64,000 nucleotides of DNA from Pecten maximus. Taxonomy: Eukaryota. The translations under genes and the position numbers were made by a program. The notes beneath the pieces were generated by a model. It was not told the DNA's origin. It made no database searches and was given only the letters and a program-made list of their open reading frames with translations. Shown in pieces: positions 23,828 to 53,167 of this stretch; position 1 is the first letter of the stretch; each line of letters begins with the position of its first letter. The stretch covers positions 29,140,001-29,204,000 of the forward strand of contig NC_047024.1 in NCBI RefSeq assembly GCF_902652985.1, read 5' to 3'.

Positions 23828-23927
23828 NNNNNNNNNNNNNNNNNNNNNNNNNNNNNNNNNNNNNNNNNNNNNNNNNNNNNNNNNNNNNNNNNNNNNNNNN
23901 NNNNNNNNNNNNNNNNNNNNNNNNNNN
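23828..23927. other. Assembly gap (100 N)
   Basis: Run of exactly 100 N, a typical placeholder for a gap of unknown size. Confidence 0.99.
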
Positions 23928-37125: not shown

Positions 37126-38430
37126 TTATGTAAATATAAAATAAGCAGCTATTTTACTTGATCCGAAAATTAATATGAACAAAACAAAGAAAAATACATC
37201 GAGAAATTTTGCCACATCCTGCCATGATGTTTCACAATAAATGTGCTTTCTTTTTGTTTGCATCATTCCGTTTCCATTGCAGTTGCATTTGTGATCCCTC
37301 TTGTTTTCTATCTCGGCACCATCGAATTCCTGAATTTTAGTCACAGCTGTTTCATTACGGATATTGTTTTCTCTGTTCAGATGTTTGTTGTTTTCCTCGA
37401 TTTGCTTTTCGGTTTCTTTAATGTTGCCCCAAAAACTTTTACAAATGATATATGTCAACCAAGATGGAATCTTCTGGTGCTGGGGTTTATGATGCAGTCT
37501 TAATACTAAAATAGTACAAATTGTCACAAGCATATTGATACCAAGTTCTGCTATCAAGAGATAACATAATCGAGGGAAAGAAGGCTCACTGGTTCCAGGC
37601 AGAGTGTCCGCCACGATAGTCATAAACACAGCAATAGCTAGCAGAACGGTAACGGAAAATCCAACACGTTCACCGGACTCAGCCGGAAGAAGAAACACCA
37701 TGATGTTCAACAGGCCCAAAATACAGAAAGGTACAATTGTGTTTATAACTTGAAACATTGGTCGTCGCTGGAAGACCATAGTCAGTGACAGTGTCTGGGA
37801 AGCCATGATAGTTGAGACATGAGTATTAGCAACTTTCATTTCCCATAGAGTGTTTGGTGTATAATAATACATGTCAATTTCGGAACGTTCTGGTTCCAAA
37901 AACACTTCAAACACTGAATACATGTACATACTGAAATAAAATGAACACGTTTGTTGATCGAACGGATAGTATGTGACGTCAGCTGGACACGTAATGTCAT
38001 ACACATCTAGAGGGGACCAGAATACATATCCCTCTTTACTTACAAGGACTTTCAGCTTGTCAAAGCCTTGAGGTTCAATTTTCTCAAATGGATTCAAAAG
38101 TAAAATATCTGGCTTCCACACCTCATTCTGTGAAAACATCATACGATCAATGCCACCAAAGTCATCAGGGTTCCATTCCAATTGAAAGTCATGCCAGAAC
38201 ATTGCAAAGAATCCAACAATAGAAAATTTGCTCTTCTTTTCTTCGAATTCCTTCAATGAGAGAAGATAAAATCCGATATTCACTTTTGTTGGCTCCGAGA
38301 GATTCAAGGTTGGGCGGAATTTCGTGCTGTAATTCGTCATCAAGTGTTGATGTAGTCTTGTCAGATCTCCATGCATTGCTCCGTATATCGTTGTGAATGA
38401 CATTGAGAGAAAAACTAGTAACGGCACCAT
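37126..38430 (-). CDS. Intronless nAChR-like Cys-loop receptor subunit (gene B), 434 aa, intact
   Basis: Signal peptide, WKPDILLLNP, Cys-loop CPADVTYYPFDQQTC, ESGERVGFSVTVLLA, four TM helices. Confidence 0.96.
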   Translation of the reverse strand: MVPLLVFLSMSFTTIYGAMHGDLTRLHQHLMTNYSTKFRPTLNLSEPTKVNIGFYLLSLKEFEEKKSKFSIVGFFAMFWHDFQLEWNPDDFGGIDRMMFSQNEVWKPDILLLNPFEKIEPQGFDKLKVLVSKEGYVFWSPLDVYDITCPADVTYYPFDQQTCSFYFSMYMYSVFEVFLEPERSEIDMYYYTPNTLWEMKVANTHVSTIMASQTLSLTMVFQRRPMFQVINTIVPFCILGLLNIMVFLLPAESGERVGFSVTVLLAIAVFMTIVADTLPGTSEPSFPRLCYLLIAELGINMLVTICTILVLRLHHKPQHQKIPSWLTYIICKSFWGNIKETEKQIEENNKHLNRENNIRNETAVTKIQEFDGAEIENKRDHKCNCNGNGMMQTKRKHIYCETSWQDVAKFLDVFFFVLFILIFGSSKIAAYFIFT

Positions 38431-42853: not shown

Positions 42854-44132
42854 TTACATAAATATAAGATAAGCGGCTAACTTGCTTGTTCCAAAAACGG
42901 CTATGAATAAAACAAAGAAAAAGACGTCGAGAAATTTCGCCACATCCTGCCAGGATGTTTCCATCTGTCCATTTTCATTGCAGTTGCATTCGGAATCCGT
43001 CATGCTTCCTGTCTCGATTCTATCTGATTCAAGAATTGTAGACACCGTTGTTTCCGAACAAATACGGTTTTGTTTACTTAGAATTGTGTTGGTGTTACTT
43101 TTCTTTTTGCGTTCGTTTTTTGTTTTAGCTTTGACACAAACTCTTTTACATATGATATATTTCAACCAAGACGGAATCTTCTCTTGCGGGGGTTTATGAT
43201 ACAGTCTTAATACTAATATAGTACAAATTGTCACAAGCATATTGGTACAGAGTTCTGCCATCAAGAGATAACATAATCGAGGGAAAGAAGGCTCACTGGT
43301 TCCAGGCAGAGTGTCCGACACGATAGTCATAAACACAGCAATAGCTAGCAAAACTGTCACGGAAAATCCAACACGTTCACCGGACTCGGCCGGAAGAAGA
43401 AACACCATGATGTTCAACAGTCCCAAAATACAGAAAGGTACGATGGTGTTAATAACTTGAAACATTGGTCGTCGTTTAAGTACCACCGTCAGTTCCAGTG
43501 TTTGGGTATCTGCTAGTGTGAAGACTCTACTTCTTGCAGATATCATCTCCCAAAGACTGTTTGGATAATAGAAATCCAAATCAATTGCAGATGAGCTCGT
43601 TTCAATAAACACATCGAATAACGTATACATGTACATGCTGAAGAAGAATGAGCATGTTTGCTGATCAAACGGATAGTATGTAATATCAGCTGGACACGTG
43701 ATTTGATATACATTTGGAGGGCCCCAGAATGTGGATCCGTCATTATCCACAGCGATCTTAAGACTGTCAAAGCCGGGAGGTTCAACATTATCAAATGGAT
43801 TCAATAGTAAGAGATCTGGTTTCCATATGGTTTTCTGTGAAACAAATATACGATCAATGCCACCAAAGTCATTAGGATTCCATTCCAGCTGACAGTCATG
43901 CCAAGTCATTACAGATATTCCATTAATGGAAAATTTGCCTGTCTTTTCTTCGAATTCCTTCATTGAGAGAATAAAAAAATCCAACATTCACTTTTGTAGG
44001 CTCCGATAGATTTAACGTAGGGCGTAATTCCGTGCTATAATTCGTCATCAAGTGTTGGTGTAGTCTTGCCAAATCCCCCTGCATTGCTCCGTATATGGTT
44101 GGCACCAAGAGAAAGAATAGCAACGACATCAT
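42854..44132 (-). pseudogene. Intronless nAChR-like subunit (gene C) with a +1 frameshift in a T7 run (pseudogene or sequencing error)
   Basis: ORF 43923-44132 carries the signal peptide and NYSTELRP; ORF 42854-43987 carries the rest. Removing one T from GGA-TTTTTTT-ATT (A run 43973-43979) restores GFFILSMKEFEEK, collinear with gene B GFYLLSLKEFEEK. Confidence 0.9.
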
Positions 44133-44669
44133 GATTACCTGTACCGTGCTGGTATGTCGGAATCAGTAGCACTACTTGCTTAAATGGAACATTATCAATC
44201 AATATAAAAACAGAGGATGTTATATCATTGGGGAAAACGTAGCAGATAACGCATTGACATTGTTAAACAGATTGAGAGAAATTGTAAAGCCTTCAGCATC
44301 AAAGAAATGAACCGCTACATAAGCATTTCCCCTGTACAAATAAATACCCTGTCGCTATGTATATATACATATATACTGAAACGAAAAAGAAACGCAACAT
44401 GGAAAATTGTGATTAATTTTGTATTAAATATACATATCTGTATAAAAATCGCGGAAATAAACATGCACCCTGCCTAACACCCATACCAATCTTCAAAATC
44501 ACCCAAGTGTGACTAGAGACCTATGCACTTCCGGCGCGGTAAAAACATCAAAAACCGTGCCTGTACAAACATATGCGTTCTTTTTTCATTCAAACCAGTA
44601 TCAATTCATCACTAACATTGAGCCACATCATCGCCAATACTTTTGCAAACAATAATTCCTTTTACAATT

Positions 44670-45551
44670 ATGCCACGGTTATCAAAGGTTGATAGAGGAC
44701 GTGCTATAGCGATGCTTCTGGCAGGGAACACGCAACTTCACGTCGCTCGACAATTCAGAGTTCACAAATCGACTATTAGTCGATTAGTTTCACGTCTTAA
44801 CGCAACAGGAAGAGTCGATGACCAGCCGAGATCAGGACGTCCACGCGTAACGTCGCGACGTCAAGACCGGGTTCTTAGGTTGGCACACCTGCGTAACAGG
44901 AGATTAACGGCCGCTGAAACGGCAAGGAATACGATTGGTAATCATAACCGTCGAATTCATCCCCAAACAGTGATCAACAGACTGTGTGAGGCTAATTTGC
45001 GTGCAAGGCGACAGTACGTTGGTTTACCACTAACACCGCAACGTCGAGCACGTCGTATGCAATGGGCAACGGCACATATGCCCAGACGTTTTCCTATGAG
45101 ACGTTGGAGGTCTATGCTCTTCACCGATGAATCTCGATTCACGTTATTTCGAGCAGATGGCCGTCAACGTGTGTACCGGCGTCGAGGCGAACGTTTTGCT
45201 GACGCCTGTGTTTTGGAACACGACCGATTTGGGGGTGGATCAGTTATGGTTTGGGCGGGAATCTCCCATGGTTTGAAGACGCCTTTGGTGATAGTCAATG
45301 GGAATTTAACGGCCGTACGCTATCGGGATGAGATCCTTAGGCCCCATGTTGTGCCGTTTGTTAGGCAGCATCATCTAACCTTTCAGCAAGATAACGCGAG
45401 ACCACACGTTGCAAGAGTCTGTAGAGACTTTCTTGCGACACAGAACATTGTTCCTATAGATTGGCCTCCATATAGCCCCGACCTGTCCCCATCAAATTGT
45501 AGGTTTAATAAAATAATACTTGTGAGCATTATGTTTAAATTTCATATGTAA
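44670..45551 (+). CDS. C-terminally truncated Tc1 transposase (lacks catalytic Glu)
   Basis: MPRLSK... with paired-like HTH, GRPR, FTDESRF, QQDNARPH and WPPYSPDLSP. It then switches at 45492 to an unrelated 19-aa tail (SNCRFNK...). Confidence 0.9.
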   Translation: MPRLSKVDRGRAIAMLLAGNTQLHVARQFRVHKSTISRLVSRLNATGRVDDQPRSGRPRVTSRRQDRVLRLAHLRNRRLTAAETARNTIGNHNRRIHPQTVINRLCEANLRARRQYVGLPLTPQRRARRMQWATAHMPRRFPMRRWRSMLFTDESRFTLFRADGRQRVYRRRGERFADACVLEHDRFGGGSVMVWAGISHGLKTPLVIVNGNLTAVRYRDEILRPHVVPFVRQHHLTFQQDNARPHVARVCRDFLATQNIVPIDWPPYSPDLSPSNCRFNKIILVSIMFKFHM

Positions 45552-45689
45552 TAGTTAATATTGAATATTGATGTAACATCCTTTAAATGTTTAGAGATTT
45601 TTAAGAACAGGTCACTTTGCTAGAAGGTCATGATTGGTAGTACCCTACGTGAATCCAAGTTGAAATGGCAGCAGTTTTGAAACCGTGCC

Positions 45690-46709
45690 CTAATATCGTG
45701 TGTGTCCTCCTCGAACAGTTATCACATCTCTAATTCTTTGTTGCATTGAGTTCATCAGGGCATTGACTTTCCGTATTGGAATGTTATTCCATTCTTGGAC
45801 GAGTACATTTGCTAACTGAGGGAGGGTATTTGGGGGGTTACGGCGATTTCGAATTCTTCTGTCTAATTCATCCCACAAATGCTCGATTGGGGACAGGTCG
45901 GGGCTATATGGAGGCCAATCTATAGGAACAATGTTCTGTGTCGCAAGAAAGTCTCTACAGACTCTTGCAACGTGTGGTCTCGCGTGATCTTGCTGAAAGG
46001 TTAGATGATGCTGCCTAACAAACGGCACAACATGGGGCCTAAGGATCTCATCCCGATAGCGTACGGCCGTTAAATTCCCATTGACTATCACCAAAGGCGT
46101 CTTCAAACCATGGGAGATTCCCGCCCAAACCATAACTGATCCACCCCCAAATCGGTCGTGTTCCAAAACACAGGCGTCAGCAAAACGTTCGCCTCGACGC
46201 CGGTACACACGTTGACGGCCATCTGCTCGAAACAACGTGAATCGAGATTCATCGGTGAAGAGCATAGACCTCCAACGTCTCATAGGAAAACGTCTGGGCA
46301 TATGTGCCGTTGCCCATTGCATACGACGTGCTCGACGTTGCGGTGTTAGTGGTAAACCAACGTACTGTCGCCTTGCACGCAAATTAGCCTCACGCAGTCT
46401 GTTGATCACTGTTTGGGGATGAATTCGACGGTTATGATTACCAATCGTATTCCTTGCCGTTTCAGCGGCCGTTAATCTCCTGTTACGCAGGTGTGCCAAC
46501 CTAAGAACCCGGTCTTGACGTCGCGACGTTACGCGTGGACGTCTTGATCTCGGCTGGTCATCGACTCTTCCTGTTGCGTTAAGACGTGAAACTAATCGAC
46601 TAATAGTCGATTTGTGAACTCTGAATTGTCGAGCGACGTGAAGTTGCGTGTTCCCTGCCAGAAGCATCGCTATAGCACGTCCTCTATCAACCTTTGATAA
46701 CCGTGGCAT
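45690..46709 (-). CDS. Full-length Tc1 transposase (339 aa from first ATG), DD34E
   Basis: FTDESRF ... QQDHARPH ... SPDLSPIEHLW, with 34 residues between the second D and the E. C-terminus RGGHTRY is typical of Tc1. Confidence 0.95.
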   Translation of the reverse strand: MPRLSKVDRGRAIAMLLAGNTQLHVARQFRVHKSTISRLVSRLNATGRVDDQPRSRRPRVTSRRQDRVLRLAHLRNRRLTAAETARNTIGNHNRRIHPQTVINRLREANLRARRQYVGLPLTPQRRARRMQWATAHMPRRFPMRRWRSMLFTDESRFTLFRADGRQRVYRRRGERFADACVLEHDRFGGGSVMVWAGISHGLKTPLVIVNGNLTAVRYRDEILRPHVVPFVRQHHLTFQQDHARPHVARVCRDFLATQNIVPIDWPPYSPDLSPIEHLWDELDRRIRNRRNPPNTLPQLANVLVQEWNNIPIRKVNALMNSMQQRIRDVITVRGGHTRY

Positions 46710-49679
46710 AATTGTAAAAGGAATTATTGTTTGCAAAAGTATTGGCGATAATGTGGCTCAATGTTAGTGATGAATTGATACTGGTTTGAATGAAAAAAGA
46801 ACGCATATGTTTGTACAGGCACGGTTTTTGATGTTTTTACCGCGCCGGAAGTGCATAGGTCTCTAGTCACACTTGGGTGATTTTGAAGATTGGTATGGGT
46901 GTTAGGCAGGGTGCATGTTTATTTCCGCGATTTTTATACAGATATGTATATTTAATACAAAATTAATCACAATTTTCCATGTTGCGTTTCTTTTTCGTTT
47001 CAGTATATAATATAGTAGAATTAACACTCAAAGTCTCCGTAAAGAGATGCTAGTACTGTCGTCGGATTATGTATTGATATGTGGTGGATTATTAACTTCT
47101 TCAAAAATGAAAAGTATTCTCCTCATTAAAATAAAAAAAATATTTGTTGTCAGACCCACCTTTCCGGTACTCTGTAAGCGAAGTTGCCGACCGCCATCTT
47201 TTTAAATACCTTATTGGTAGGATACCACAGAGTCCTAAAAGTGTTTCAGCATAAAGCACATTGAAATTATAAGATTATTTTATTCAACGTATGTATGGTT
47301 GCCATTATTCAAATTATTACTGCAGTTAAATCAATAAGATGATGACTTGTTCAATCAATCTTAATACACGACCATGCCCCATGTTTGATGACATGTAACA
47401 TACCGTCCATGGATGTGAGTATCATTGTAGCGAAATGTTCGTTATTTTTGTACCGAACATTTCATCTTTTCATTCGGATGATTTAGAAGTAGATAGTCAG
47501 CATTTTTGTGTATGACATGGACTATTTCTGTCATTATCGTTAAACCGTAAAACAGATTCCAGTAGACATATTTCGTGTTGTTCAGTTTGTGATGTACATG
47601 TATTTGTTTGAATTCTATATCTAATGGGGTTTTTTTGTTTGTTTGTTTTTGTTTTTGTTTTGTTTTTTTCGAAACCTCCATTTACTTTATGTCTCTAATA
47701 GTTTTGAGCGTTATACAATGAGTATAAAACTAAGGTTTCGAGATGTTTCCATTATGATAAGTTCATGTATTAAACGGTATTCACATTTTCTATGTTAATG
47801 ATTTTCTATATAAGCAATACACCTCTAAAAATCAGTAACGTACATTCCAAAGGGATATGTTTCACGAATGAGTATGTAACAAAATATATATACTACAATA
47901 TTAACATGAATTATTCACTTTAAGGACGGAAAATGGACAAATCTCGAGCAGAAATCCAAAATCCATATAGCGAAAGATTGAATGCAATGATGCGGAAGGG
48001 TACATTAAAAATAAGGGGATCGAAAAACTATGTTCCCCCAGACCACTTTTCTTCTGTTACGCAAATAAACGGGGCTTGAAGCAAAATGTGGCATGGAAAA
48101 GACCAAGGAAACAAAAAGAAAAAATATGAAACTGAATCGATCACTACGGAAGACGATGTTGTCAGAGGAAATAGAAACAACGCTAACATGGAAAGGGCAC
48201 CTGACCCTACAGAGCGTTTTGTACAAACGCCTTTGTAAAAGCTGGAAGACGGAAAAGGATAAGTCGGGCACTATCGAAAAATCCAAGAGAATATATGAAG
48301 CCCAAGGAAAACCAAATATAAAACGGCACAGCGGAAGTTGCAGCGGTGCAAAAGAAAACTAAATCGCCTATTACTTCTAGTAAAGTAGATACGCAACTTA
48401 GGAAAGCTTGAATCAGTAGAGAACATGGCAGGAAGGTAAGAAAGCAGCTTCTGATGTTACATGTCCTGACAAGAGAAATAAAATCAGCAAAGGAAGGGAA
48501 TAACGTGGCTAAACAAAGGATATTACTTACTGTCATTGCTGGTAAAGTTATCAAGATATACAGGTGTGCTGTAGATATGATGAAAAGAGTAAGTGAAGAC
48601 AGACGACAATAATATGCCCCTTTGCATTGGGAGTTCTGACTATCTTTATATAGGTCGATAAATAGTAAATTCGTCAAACTTCGGAATGCGTATGTGTAAT
48701 GCGATTTTGTAAGTAACAATAATAACCGTCAAGAATATGTCTATTTGGCAAAATTGACAAGGAGAAGCTGTAATTCTAATTTATGAAGAGACCCCATGTT
48801 CATATGAAAAGCTAATAATAAGCATTGCTAATTCTAAAATCATATAGCCGCAAGAAAAACAACATATAATCTGCCGTTTTTCATTTACAAAAGTCGACTT
48901 GTCCATTGTAAAAATAGGATTGCCAGGGAAATTTTCGTTGTAATGGAGAAAGGCGAAACGTGAAAATTTGCTCCGAATGGTCAAAATGTTTGAAATAACA
49001 ATGCAATATTCTGCCTCATTTATGGATGAAAAAGATAACTGAAATATCGCTGCGGTCCATGTTCTATATAAAAAATAAAGATAGTATATGGAGCGCAACA
49101 AAAATCTTTCCTTACCCGACCTACTTTCTATCGCGTCAGAATAGAGACCCCCGTGATGAGTGGCGAATCGCAATTAATTACGATTTCGATCGTTACAGAA
49201 AATGGCGGTATTTTTTATTCCCTTGCGTTCCTTATTGCTGTTAACCTTTTATTGTTTTGTTAATTGAATATTATTAGGTACCATAATCGTAATTTTTCAA
49301 ATGCTTTTATCTGTAAAATCTATTATCATAGATTTAATACCGCCTTATGTGAATCCCATCATGCTTGCTACACTATCGTTATCAGAATTGGCTTGATATT
49401 CTGTCGGAGATTAGTGTGAAGGAAGAACATATATATTCATTCTACATTACACACGTGTCCAATCGAAACTACAAACTGAGTACACAAAACTACTGTACGT
49501 GAAGAGATAAGTTGCTAATGGATTCGATAAACGTAATGGAATGGTAAACAAGTTTGTTATAGGATTTGTGAGTAATAGCCGTATTCTCTTCAGTCGAAAC
49601 ATTAAAAAGAATGTCAATCAATTTGGAAGCATAAACTGGTTGAGTGTTCTATAAATAGATTAAGGTTATCATATGGCGA

Positions 49680-51871: not shown

Positions 51872-53167
51872 ATGATGCCATTACTATTCATTCTCTCAGT
51901 GTCACTGACAACCATATTCGGGACAATGCATGGAAATTTAACTAAACTACATCGGCACCTGATGGCAAATTATAGTCCAGAATTCCGTCCTGCGTTAAAC
52001 CTCTCAGAACCAACAACGGTGAATATCAAGTTTTATCCATTCTCGTTGAAGGAGTTCGAAGAAAAGACCAGCAAGCTTTCTATAGTTGGAGTATTTGTAA
52101 TCGAGTGGCATGACTTTCAGTTGAAATGGAACCCGGATGAGTTTGGTGACCTAAATCGTATGCTGATTTCACAAAACACTTTATGGAAACCAGATATCTT
52201 ACTAATGAATCCGTTCGAGAAAATTGAACCTCCAGGCTTTGACAGGCTAAAGATCCTTGTTCTTAATGATGGATCCGTATCCTGGGCCCCTCCAGATGTC
52301 TTTGAGGTCTCGTGTGCAGCTGATATCACATATTATCCATTTGATCAGCATACATGTTTATTTCATTTTAGCATTTACATGTATAACATATTCGAGGTGT
52401 TGATAAAACCAGACTACTATGAGATAACTTTGGATTATTATTCACCAAACAGTCTTTGGAAAATGAAATTTGCAAGTAGTCGTGTACTCACACACACTGA
52501 CTCCCAGATACTGGTACTGAAGATGATTTTCCAGCGACGACCAATGTTTCAAGTTATCAATACAATATTACCGTTCTGTTTTTTGGGGTTTTTGAATATC
52601 ATGGTATTTCTTCTTCCGACTGAGTCCGGTGAACGTGTTGGATTTTCCGTTACCGTTCTGCTAGCTATTGCTGTGTTTATGACTATCGTGGCTGACACTC
52701 TGCCTGGAACCAGTGAGCCTTCATTCCCTCGATTGTGTTATCTTTTGGTGGCAGAGCTTGGTATCAATATGCTTGTGACGATTTGTACTATATTAGTGTT
52801 AAGACTGCATCATAAACCCCAGCACCAGAAGATTCCATCTTGGTTGGCGTACATTATAGGTAAAAGTGTTCGTTGTAACGCTAAAATGGGAAAAGGACAC
52901 AAACTAGATCTCATAAATGAAAGCAGCATTTGTCTTGAAACCACCGTGTCAACGATTTCAGAATCGGGAAAAGGAAACAAAAAGGACCTCGAATTGAACA
53001 TCGATTTAACTCCCAGTGGAAACGGTGTGACACAAACTCAAAGAAAACATGTTTGCTGCAAAACGTCATGGCAGGATGTCGCAAAATTTCTCGATTTATT
53101 TTTCTTTATTTTGTTCATGATATTTTTCGGAACAAGCAAGATAGCCGCGTATTTTGCATTTGCATAA
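51872..53167 (+). CDS. Intronless nAChR-like Cys-loop receptor subunit (gene D), 431 aa, intact
   Basis: Signal peptide, WKPDILLMNP, Cys-loop CAADITYYPFDQHTC, ESGERVGFSVTVLLA, four TM helices. Confidence 0.96.
   Translation: MMPLLFILSVSLTTIFGTMHGNLTKLHRHLMANYSPEFRPALNLSEPTTVNIKFYPFSLKEFEEKTSKLSIVGVFVIEWHDFQLKWNPDEFGDLNRMLISQNTLWKPDILLMNPFEKIEPPGFDRLKILVLNDGSVSWAPPDVFEVSCAADITYYPFDQHTCLFHFSIYMYNIFEVLIKPDYYEITLDYYSPNSLWKMKFASSRVLTHTDSQILVLKMIFQRRPMFQVINTILPFCFLGFLNIMVFLLPTESGERVGFSVTVLLAIAVFMTIVADTLPGTSEPSFPRLCYLLVAELGINMLVTICTILVLRLHHKPQHQKIPSWLAYIIGKSVRCNAKMGKGHKLDLINESSICLETTVSTISESGKGNKKDLELNIDLTPSGNGVTQTQRKHVCCKTSWQDVAKFLDLFFFILFMIFFGTSKIAAYFAFA

What the first reader, a model, noticed from the sequence alone, without database searches (positions are those of the whole stretch)
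44374..47005. Fold-back Tc1 with 1.1-kb arms: architecture of a Mu killer-like hairpin silencer
Seen: two left ends face each other, with 1118-bp arms (only ~5 mismatches spotted), a 396-bp loop, no right-end TIR and TA on both outer sides. It is therefore one rearranged unit rather than two insertions. Read-through from either promoter would fold into >1 kb of dsRNA covering most of the transposase. Overlapping poly(A) signals TTTAATAAA (~45504-45512) lie ~13 bp from the junction, so the minus-strand gene has lost its downstream termination context. Known: maize Mu killer is an inverted duplication of a transposon end whose hairpin RNA silences its family in trans. Inference: an animal Tc1 equivalent that may still be mobilisable because both ends are intact TIRs.
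Basis: partly seen in the sequence, partly recalled or inferred. Interest (0 to 1): 0.75.

Follow-up and report, generated by a model that had tools for sequence, protein, structure and literature searches.

The report
Fold-back rearranged copy of active scallop Tc1
A jumping gene in a scallop genome sits joined to an upside-down partial copy of itself, most likely a DNA-repair accident, and nothing yet shows that it silences its relatives.

Summary
Window 44374-47005 is a 2632-bp unit with two 1118-nt arms that differ at 5 sites, a 396-nt loop, and TA on both outer sides.

The minus-strand copy is a canonical 1540-bp Tc1-like element. It lacks only its last 26 nt, which is the 25-bp right terminal inverted repeat (TIR) plus 1 nt. 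It keeps an intact 339-aa DD34E transposase ORF. The plus arm is element positions 1-1118.

The family has about 360 near-identical copies. The inner junction occurs once in the 918-Mb assembly.

A contig from another individual joins the two flanks with the whole unit missing, so the unit is polymorphic. No read evidence tests the inner junction.

The arms share no derived variant and differ about as much as two random copies would.

The best origin is a template switch between the identical TIRs during break or gap repair, followed by end joining. This is a published model for fold-back MITEs (PMC3814204).

The Mu killer likeness is structural only. No locus-specific RNA was seen. Both neighbouring genes point away from the unit. 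Molluscs reportedly lack a dedicated siRNA pathway (PMC12479628).

Verdict: real, modestly interesting, function undemonstrated.

The parts
44372..44373 (.). TA next to the left outer end (target-site duplication position)
   Evidence: Sequence. The family's TA duplication was shown at a paralogous empty site.
44374..44398 (+). Outer 25-bp TIR of the plus arm. It is identical in left and right ends of the family.
44374..45491 (+). Plus arm, element positions 1-1118. It has 1 difference from the master (position 612, a CpG C>T, window 44985).
44670..45551 (+). Truncated transposase ORF: 274 native aa plus a 19-aa tail read from the loop. It keeps the HTH domains, D153 and D241, and lacks E276.
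45491..45492 (.). Inner junction. Position 1118 of the plus copy is joined bluntly to position 1514 of the minus copy, 1 nt inside the boundary of the missing right TIR.
   Evidence: The 24-mer across it is unique in the genome.
45492..45887 (-). Loop of 396 nt, element positions 1119-1514 of the minus copy (end of the ORF plus the 3' untranslated part).
45504..45512 (.). Overlapping poly(A) hexamers: AATAAA on + (45507-45512) and ATTAAA on - (45509-45504).
45492..47005 (-). Minus copy, element positions 1-1514 of 1540. It has 5 differences from the master (window 46750, 46544, 46233, 45986, 45805).
   Evidence: The 25-mers over 45986 and 46544 are unique in the genome.
45690..46709 (-). Intact 339-aa Tc1-like DD34E transposase ORF. 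It matches the family protein P0001 at 336 of 339 residues (G56R, N242H, A302V).
45888..47005 (-). Right arm, the part of the minus copy that pairs with the plus arm.
46981..47005 (-). Outer 25-bp TIR of the minus copy.
47006..47007 (.). TA next to the right outer end.

Best explanation
This is a real, single-locus fold-back derivative of a young, high-copy Tc1-like (DD34E) transposon in a scallop genome, and it is present in some individuals and absent in others. A resident copy on the minus strand is complete except for its last 26 nt. In their place it carries the first 1118 nt of the element in inverted orientation, so both outer ends are the same 25-bp TIR.

The most likely origin (inferred) is faulty repair of a break or excision gap at the right end. 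DNA synthesis copied the 25-bp TIR, then switched to the identical TIR at a left end, either on the same or sister copy or on another copy. It then copied about 1.1 kb inward and was blunt-joined back about where it had left. The unit is a by-product of transposon activity.

Its possible effects are only potential, and none is shown:
- a hairpin or antisense RNA, if transcription reads through the junction;
- a catalytically dead transposase of 274 native residues that could still bind DNA;
- a full-length transposase with three substitutions.
For: Structure.

Family: the element is 1540 bp with a 25-bp perfect TIR. Its TA duplication was shown by three paralogous empty sites, which have (TA)3 where the occupied site has (TA)3 on each side of CTG...CAG. 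Left-end markers number 361 and right-end markers 359.

The minus copy stops 1 nt inside the boundary of the missing 25-bp TIR, the point where a TIR-guided switch would leave and return. The join is blunt.

The junction 24-mer has 1 match in 918 Mb. Two family ends lying 0-12 nt apart have 0 matches in the genome.

Another individual (X5) has one 1362-nt contig that joins 44371 to 47004, with the whole unit absent. X1 has contigs that join each flank to a TIR.

Other rearranged copies are common. Of 20 copies sampled in genome order, 1 has an internal deletion, 1 is interrupted and 1 has a 12-nt insertion.

The same mechanism is proposed in print for a Tc1/mariner fold-back MITE: the newly made TIR switches to the other TIR during gap repair, then the ends are joined (PMC3814204, passages read).
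Against: The empty allele in X5 has (TA)4. A single TA-duplicating insertion behind an occupied allele with (TA)2 on each side predicts (TA)3. That needs an extra TA-tract length difference between haplotypes.

The arms share no derived variant. Their 5 differences in 1118 nt are no fewer than the roughly 3.5 expected for two random copies. A self-templated origin therefore needs all 5 to have arisen later, or the template was another copy.

A return join without microhomology is unusual for a replicative switch.

The inner junction and the private variants were not seen in any read-derived contig listed.
Confidence: 0.55

Rival explanations
1. The unit formed elsewhere and then transposed here as one piece, using its two left ends.
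For: There is TA on both sides and the whole unit is cleanly absent in X5. The outer 25 bp are the same in left and right ends. Mariner transposons with two identical ends do transpose in vitro (PMC4505599, passages read).
Against: The junction is unique in the assembly and absent from the metagenome scan. No donor or sibling copy was found. The empty allele has (TA)4, not (TA)3. This model does not explain why the break lies 1 nt inside the TIR boundary.
Confidence: 0.15
2. Two separate copies inserted tail to tail into neighbouring TA dinucleotides. A deletion of about 450 bp then removed 422 nt of one copy, 26 nt of the other, and what lay between them.
For: This predicts exactly the (TA)4 empty allele seen in X5 alongside (TA)2 on each side of the unit. 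The arms share no derived variant and differ as much as random copies. The family strongly prefers TATATA contexts: ATATA lies left of 29 of 29 copies and TATAT lies to the right of nearly all copies with a readable right end.
Against: There are 0 cases in the genome of two ends lying 0-12 nt apart, among about 360 copies. Two hits within 2 bp in a 918-Mb genome are very unlikely by chance. A deletion end 1 nt inside the TIR boundary would be a coincidence.
Confidence: 0.12
3. Assembly artefact: the true allele is a plain 1540-bp insertion, and the inverted arm was added by a chimeric long read.
For: No contig listed spans 45491/45492. Contigs from X1 enter the TIRs by only 22-25 nt, where the two ends are alike. 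Long inverted repeats are hard to assemble.
Against: The arms are not identical: they have 5 differences, and 2 of 2 tested variants of the minus copy are unique in the genome. There is a 396-nt asymmetric loop rather than a perfect palindrome. The extra arm ends exactly at a TIR joined to the true left flank.
Confidence: 0.07
4. Whatever its origin, the locus works like Mu killer. Read-through makes a hairpin of more than 1 kb, or antisense RNA, which feeds small RNAs that silence the family in trans.
For: The layout matches Mu killer, with two TIRs from the transposase end and an inverted partial transposase gene (PMC3440606). A read-through RNA would pair 1115 of 1118 arm positions in register, at -2335 kcal/mol against -390 for one copy. 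The T-rich 26 nt after ATTAAA of the minus gene are lost. Inverted Ac duplications do silence Ac in maize (10.1101/2020.01.07.897926, abstract and outline read). Molluscs have abundant piRNAs (PMC12479628; PMC6128900, listing only).
Against: No RNA from this locus was seen. The X16 contig carries the master letter at all 5 diagnostic sites, and the flanks have depth 0. The neighbouring genes point away from the unit. AATAAA lies 16 nt after the junction on +. The family appears in RNA libraries of several studies and has about 360 near-identical copies. A survey of molluscs found no dedicated siRNA pathway and suggests that long dsRNA is edited rather than diced (PMC12479628).
Confidence: 0.07

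Closest known systems
Mu killer (maize, MuDR derivative)
   Same: Both TIRs come from the transposase-proximal end. Two partial or whole copies of the transposase gene meet in an inverted duplication of about 1.1-1.3 kb. It is a single locus derived from an active autonomous element (PMC3440606, passages read).
   Different: The superfamily (Mutator against Tc1/mariner) and the kingdom differ. Muk is transcribed and silences MuDR through plant siRNA and DNA methylation. Here transcription, small RNAs and silencing are all untested, and the host phylum reportedly lacks a dedicated siRNA pathway. Here one copy keeps a complete ORF.
Ac/Ds composite insertions with inverted duplications (maize)
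   Same: They are inverted duplications of transposon sequence made by the element's own aberrant activity, and they are transcribed from the element or a flanking promoter into dsRNA (10.1101/2020.01.07.897926, abstract and outline read).
   Different: They arise by alternative transposition plus re-replication, which engages the ends of two elements. Here the inner junction is at no element end. Silencing was shown there and not here.
Fold-back or long-TIR MITEs made by a TIR template switch in gap repair (Goblin from Ozma, Aedes aegypti)
   Same: It is in the Tc1/mariner superfamily. The model is that the newly made TIR switches to the other TIR, the subterminal region is copied in inverted orientation, and the ends are then joined (PMC3814204, passages read).
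   Different: Goblin is miniature and amplified into a family, and its junction shows inverted microhomology. This unit is full-size, single-copy, blunt-joined and still coding.
Engineered mariner transposons with two identical ends (Mos1, Mboumar-9 LL/RR)
   Same: Elements with two copies of one end are cut and integrated by the transposase (PMC4505599, passages read).
   Different: Those carry short IRs around a marker gene and were tested in vitro. Activity depends strongly on which end is doubled: Mos1 LL is 50-fold below the natural arrangement. Nothing was tested for this family.

Membership tests
Tc1-like (DD34E) transposon of the Tc1/mariner superfamily | Transposase with N-terminal helix-turn-helix DNA-binding domains and a DDE_3 catalytic domain | tested here: met
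   Pfam: DDE_3 1.3e-15, HTH_Tnp_Tc3_2 4.6e-09, HTH_23, HTH_28. There are 3054 relatives at E<=0.001, many of 339 aa.
Tc1-like (DD34E) transposon of the Tc1/mariner superfamily | Catalytic triad with 34 residues between the second D and the E | tested here: met
   D153, D241 and E276 were read from the alignment. Assigning these as the catalytic residues rests on the recalled Tc1 motif, not on a tool.
Tc1-like (DD34E) transposon of the Tc1/mariner superfamily | Short terminal inverted repeats and a TA target-site duplication | tested here: met
   The TIR is 25 bp and perfect. 23 of the 25 other copies printed show the exact right end. A paralogous empty site in 3 of 3 paralogs fits a TA duplication with TACTG...CAGTA ends.
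Mu killer-type hairpin silencer | Inverted duplication of the transposase-proximal end, with both TIRs from that end | tested here: met
Mu killer-type hairpin silencer | The locus is transcribed across the inverted duplication (hairpin or antisense RNA) | tested here: inconclusive
   One RNA run was laid (X16). Its 1546-nt contig is the master copy, the flanks have depth 0, and no junction contig was listed. Contigs drop rare variants.
Mu killer-type hairpin silencer | Small RNAs derived from the arms | not testable with these tools
   No small-RNA library was on hand, and the single read-laying run was used.
Mu killer-type hairpin silencer | Dominant, heritable silencing of the family in trans | not testable with these tools
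   Only indirect evidence exists. The family has about 360 near-identical copies and is held by 5 runs on record as RNA.
Fold-back (long-TIR) non-autonomous derivative | Long inverted arms derived from one end, with ends recognised by the family's transposase | tested here: met
   The arms are 1118 nt and the outer 25-bp TIRs are intact. Recognition by the transposase is inferred.
Fold-back (long-TIR) non-autonomous derivative | Amplified as a family of its own | tested here: not met
   The junction 24-mer, with up to 2 mismatches allowed, has 1 match in the genome and 0 in metagenome contigs.

The most novel reading that the evidence does not exclude
A segregating Tc1 fold-back in a wild animal that acts as the trigger by which the host first recognises a currently active DNA transposon. 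Read-through from the copy that lost its T-rich terminator context would give antisense or hairpin RNA. That RNA would enter the piRNA pathway, or be hyper-edited, and would damp the roughly 360-copy family in carriers. This would be an animal counterpart of Mu killer, with carriers and non-carriers already present in public samples.
Probability: 0.06. Interest if true: 0.8.

Novelty: new member of a known kind. Interest (0 to 1): 0.3.

Why it matters
How a genome first notices a newly active DNA transposon is an open question. The maize answers, Mu killer and the Ac composite insertions, are inverted duplications made by the element's own mishaps. This scallop locus has the same architecture inside a family that is still young, and it is present in one individual and absent in another. 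Carriers and non-carriers could therefore be compared directly.

It is also a rare full-size snapshot of the step proposed for the birth of fold-back, long-TIR MITEs. Without RNA or small-RNA evidence it remains a structural curiosity.

Tried and rejected
Searches and tests that did not settle anything:
- Haplotig search. Each flank was searched in the genome for an empty copy. The only hits were local paralogs of the neighbouring receptor gene, which end 165 nt before the insertion. No haplotig was found.
- L009 flank as an empty-site test. That flank is a repeat whose matches stop 24 nt short of the insertion, so it was of no use. L022 worked instead.
- A 4-bp TATA or 6-bp TATATA duplication with CTG...CAG ends. 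This was rejected. The right flanks of several copies differ from the left at the 6th or 4th base. The paralogous empty site has (TA)3.
- Excision footprint as the source of (TA)4. The simplest footprint for 2-nt staggered cuts would give (TA)5 (inference from recalled Tc1 chemistry), so this stays unresolved.
- Sub-lineage test of the arms. The variants of the minus copy at 45986 and 46544 are unique. The one variant of the plus arm is shared with 2 other copies, but it is a CpG transition and those copies carry other differences, so it is uninformative. The variants at 46750 and 46233 were not tested.
- Genome-wide list of facing left ends. The tool lists only 100 of 361 places. Among those, none lie closer than 14 kb. 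The survey is incomplete.
- Junction in metagenome contigs: 0.
- Earlier findings of the scan: none near the locus and none on fold-backs.
- Read laying could not test the inner junction or the private variants. All four runs are kept as contigs, which drop low-depth variants of a repeat whose depth is in the thousands. X4 gave neither a bridging contig nor a flank-to-TIR contig, so it is undetermined.
- Supplementary files of papers were not asked for.


Full report
OBSERVATION

The repeat finder reports one long inverted repeat, 44370-45491 against 45888-47009. It is 1122 nt long with 396 nt between the arms. A base-by-base comparison gives 5 mismatches in 1122 positions. The outer 4 nt of each arm are flanking TATA. 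The match does not continue inward past 45491/45888 or outward past the TATA.

THE FAMILY

A search of the window's own genome (918 Mb) with the right-hand copy gave 569 candidates. 40 were scored, and besides the window itself 39 places match query 30-52 to 1569 at 99-100%.

Canonical copies are 1540 bp, TACTG...CAGTA, with a perfect 25-bp terminal inverted repeat (TIR). Of the 30 loci fetched, 26 held the exact head and tail strings. The 4 dropped differ at the first flanking base. Of the 25 that are not the window, 23 show the exact right end, one is cut by its contig end, and one has a 1-nt deletion.

The target-site duplication is TA. Copy L022 lies inside another repeat. Its three best paralogs read CAA-(TA)3-ATTT where L022 reads (TA)3 | CTG...CAG | (TA)3. 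This fits a TA duplication with element ends TA...TA, and it rules out a 4-bp TATA duplication.

Exhaustive pattern counts give 361 left-end markers (194 +, 167 -) and 359 right-end markers (165 +, 194 -). That is about 360 copies, nearly all with both ends.

The protein is a Tc1-like transposase. Pfam finds DDE_3, HTH_Tnp_Tc3_2, HTH_23 and HTH_28. It has 3054 relatives at E<=0.001. D153, D241 and E276 give DD34E spacing (read; the motif assignment is recalled).

ANATOMY OF THE LOCUS

The minus-strand copy (47005 down to 45492) is element positions 1-1514. It lacks only the last 26 nt, which are the 25-bp right TIR plus one T. Its ORF (46709-45690) is intact at 339 aa. It differs from the family protein P0001 at 3 of 339 residues: G56R, N242H next to D241, and A302V.

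The plus arm (44374-45491) is positions 1-1118. Its ORF has 274 native residues and then 19 residues read from the loop, and it stops before E276.

The join is blunt, with no shared letters. It lies 1 nt inside the inner boundary of the missing TIR. Because the 25-bp TIR is identical at both ends of the family, the outermost 25 nt of the plus arm could equally be the original right TIR of the minus copy.

AATAAA on + starts at 45507, 16 nt after the junction. ATTAAA on - starts at 45509 and ends 12 nt before the junction. The T-rich 26 nt that follow it in canonical copies are gone.

IS IT ONE OF MANY?

No. The 24-mer across the junction, with up to 2 mismatches allowed, has 1 match in the genome and 0 in the metagenome contigs. 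Among the 100 of 361 left-end places that the tool lists, none lie closer than 14 kb to each other. This survey is incomplete.

READS

One read-laying run was made, on 3601 letters and four runs, all kept as contigs.
- X5 is another individual of the same organism label. It has a 1362-nt contig (depth 29) that covers 43900-44371 and then 47004-47500. It skips 2632 nt, with 4 letters fitting on either side. The whole unit is absent there, and the flanks carry 4 other letters and 1 gap on each side.
- X1 may be the assembly's own source, so it is not independent. It has a 741-nt contig over 43900-44395 and a 654-nt contig over 46985-47500, and it shows no skip.
- These X1 contigs enter the TIR by 22-25 nt only, where the left and right ends are alike. 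They show that a family member sits here, not that it is a fold-back.
- X4 is undetermined.
- No listed contig tests 45491/45492 or the private variants. At 45986, 46233, 46544 and 46750 the depth in X1 is 0. Contigs drop rare variants of a repeat whose depth runs to thousands.
- The RNA run X16 holds a 1546-nt contig (depth 53) that runs from TIR to TIR. It carries the master letter at all 5 sites where the minus copy differs. Its depth on both flanks is 0.

So the family is present in RNA libraries: 5 listed runs are on record as RNA. No RNA can be assigned to this locus.

ORIGIN

The empty allele reads CA(TA)4ATATAG. The occupied allele reads CA(TA)2[unit](TA)2ATATAG. A single TA-duplicating insertion predicts (TA)3. 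Two insertions into neighbouring TAs followed by an internal deletion predict (TA)4.

Against two insertions, a pattern for two family ends lying 0-12 nt apart has 0 matches in the genome. A deletion end 1 nt inside the TIR boundary would also be a coincidence.

The arms do not help to decide.
- Against the majority of 29 top-scoring copies, the minus copy has 5 differences and the plus arm has 1. Only position 1205 is shared with one other copy, and the two arms share none.
- The 25-mers over two of the minus-copy variants are unique in the genome.
- The plus-arm variant is a CpG transition. It is shared with 2 copies that differ from the arm elsewhere.
- The 29 copies were chosen for their likeness to the query. 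An unbiased sample of 20 copies taken in genome order shows 16 ungapped full-length copies with 0-7 differences from the master (mean 2.4). It also shows one internal deletion, one interruption at position 1407, one 12-nt insertion and one 1-nt indel.
- Two random copies would thus differ by about 3.5 in 1118 nt. The arms differ by 5.

I rank the origins as follows.
1. In-place faulty repair with a template switch between the identical TIRs, followed by end joining. This explains the position of the junction and, if the template was another copy, the lack of shared variants. The same model is in print for the Tc1/mariner MITE Goblin (PMC3814204, passages read).
2. Formation elsewhere and transposition as a unit with two left ends. 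This is possible in principle for mariner elements (PMC4505599, passages read).
3. Two insertions plus a deletion.
4. An assembly artefact.

Models 1 and 2 need a TA-tract length difference between haplotypes that already differ by about 1%.

WHAT IT COULD DO

A read-through RNA of either strand would pair 1115 of 1118 arm positions in register. Its energy is -2335 or -2346 kcal/mol, against -390 for one copy. This is a property of the sequence, not evidence of expression.

The setting argues against host-driven read-through. The unit lies between nicotinic-receptor-like genes that point away from it, one on the minus strand at 42854-44132 and one on the plus strand at 51872-53167. Its left end is 242 nt upstream of the ATG of the minus-strand one, which is frameshifted relative to its paralog.

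Transcripts from the plus arm meet AATAAA at once. Transcripts from the minus copy keep ATTAAA but lose the T-rich sequence downstream.

The host is a scallop. The nearest named proteins are from Pectinidae, and proteins that NCBI names Pecten maximus lie on a contig of the same length as the one holding the window's proteins.

A survey of 32 molluscs found no dedicated endogenous siRNA pathway. It found abundant piRNAs, and it suggests that long dsRNA may be edited rather than diced (PMC12479628, abstract and passages read). A preprint on zebra mussel says the like (listing only). A plant-style route from hairpin to siRNA is therefore unlikely here. A piRNA or editing route is conceivable but untested.

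The 274-residue truncated protein could compete for TIRs (inference).

COMPARISON

The layout equals that given for Mu killer: both TIRs from the transposase end and an inverted partial transposase gene of about 1.3 kb (PMC3440606, passages read). It also resembles the inverted Ac duplications that silence Ac (10.1101/2020.01.07.897926, abstract and outline read). Membership in that functional class fails for lack of any tested functional feature. As a structure, it is a new, full-size, single-copy example of a fold-back derivative of a Tc1-like element.

VERDICT

This is a new member of a known kind, with interest 0.3.

Noticed in passing
window 37126-38430 (-), 42854-44132 (-), 51872-53167 (+): These are three intronless nicotinic-acetylcholine-receptor-like paralogs (Pfam PF02931 and PF02932 in their database relatives). 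The middle one needs a frame change between residues of about 52-68 relative to its paralog, so it is either a pseudogene or has a short intron. The fold-back lies 242 nt upstream of its ATG.
   Followed up: partly
run X16 laid on window 45492-47009: An RNA-library contig of 1546 nt covers the master element from TIR to TIR, plus the consensus TATA/TA flanks. This suggests read-through transcripts from many loci, or DNA carried over into the library.
   Followed up: no
L061 (G000:C2:18843562-18845301), L065 (G000:C2:34459936-34461675), L050 (G000:C1:28485967-28487706): These are other altered copies of the family. L061 has an internal deletion of positions 236-487. L065 is interrupted after position 1407, with its right-end marker about 470 nt further on. 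L050 has a 12-nt insertion.
   Followed up: partly
flanks of 29 copies: The family has a strong target preference. ATATA lies left of the element in 29 of 29 copies, and TATAT lies to the right in nearly all. The family therefore lands in short (TA)n tracts, which blurs duplications and footprints.
   Followed up: partly
runs X7/X21 (organism B) and X6/X8 (invertebrate metagenome): Runs with other organism labels hold 0.62-0.66 of the sampled words, about the share that the element alone accounts for. The family, nearly identical, may occur in another species or in mixed samples.
   Followed up: no
G000:C1:34214708-34219081: There is a long tandem array with a period of about 31 nt. It matches a 38-nt piece of the repeat that flanks copy L009.
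   Followed up: no
window 23828-23927: There is a run of 100 N (an assembly gap or masked stretch). It was left untouched.
   Followed up: no
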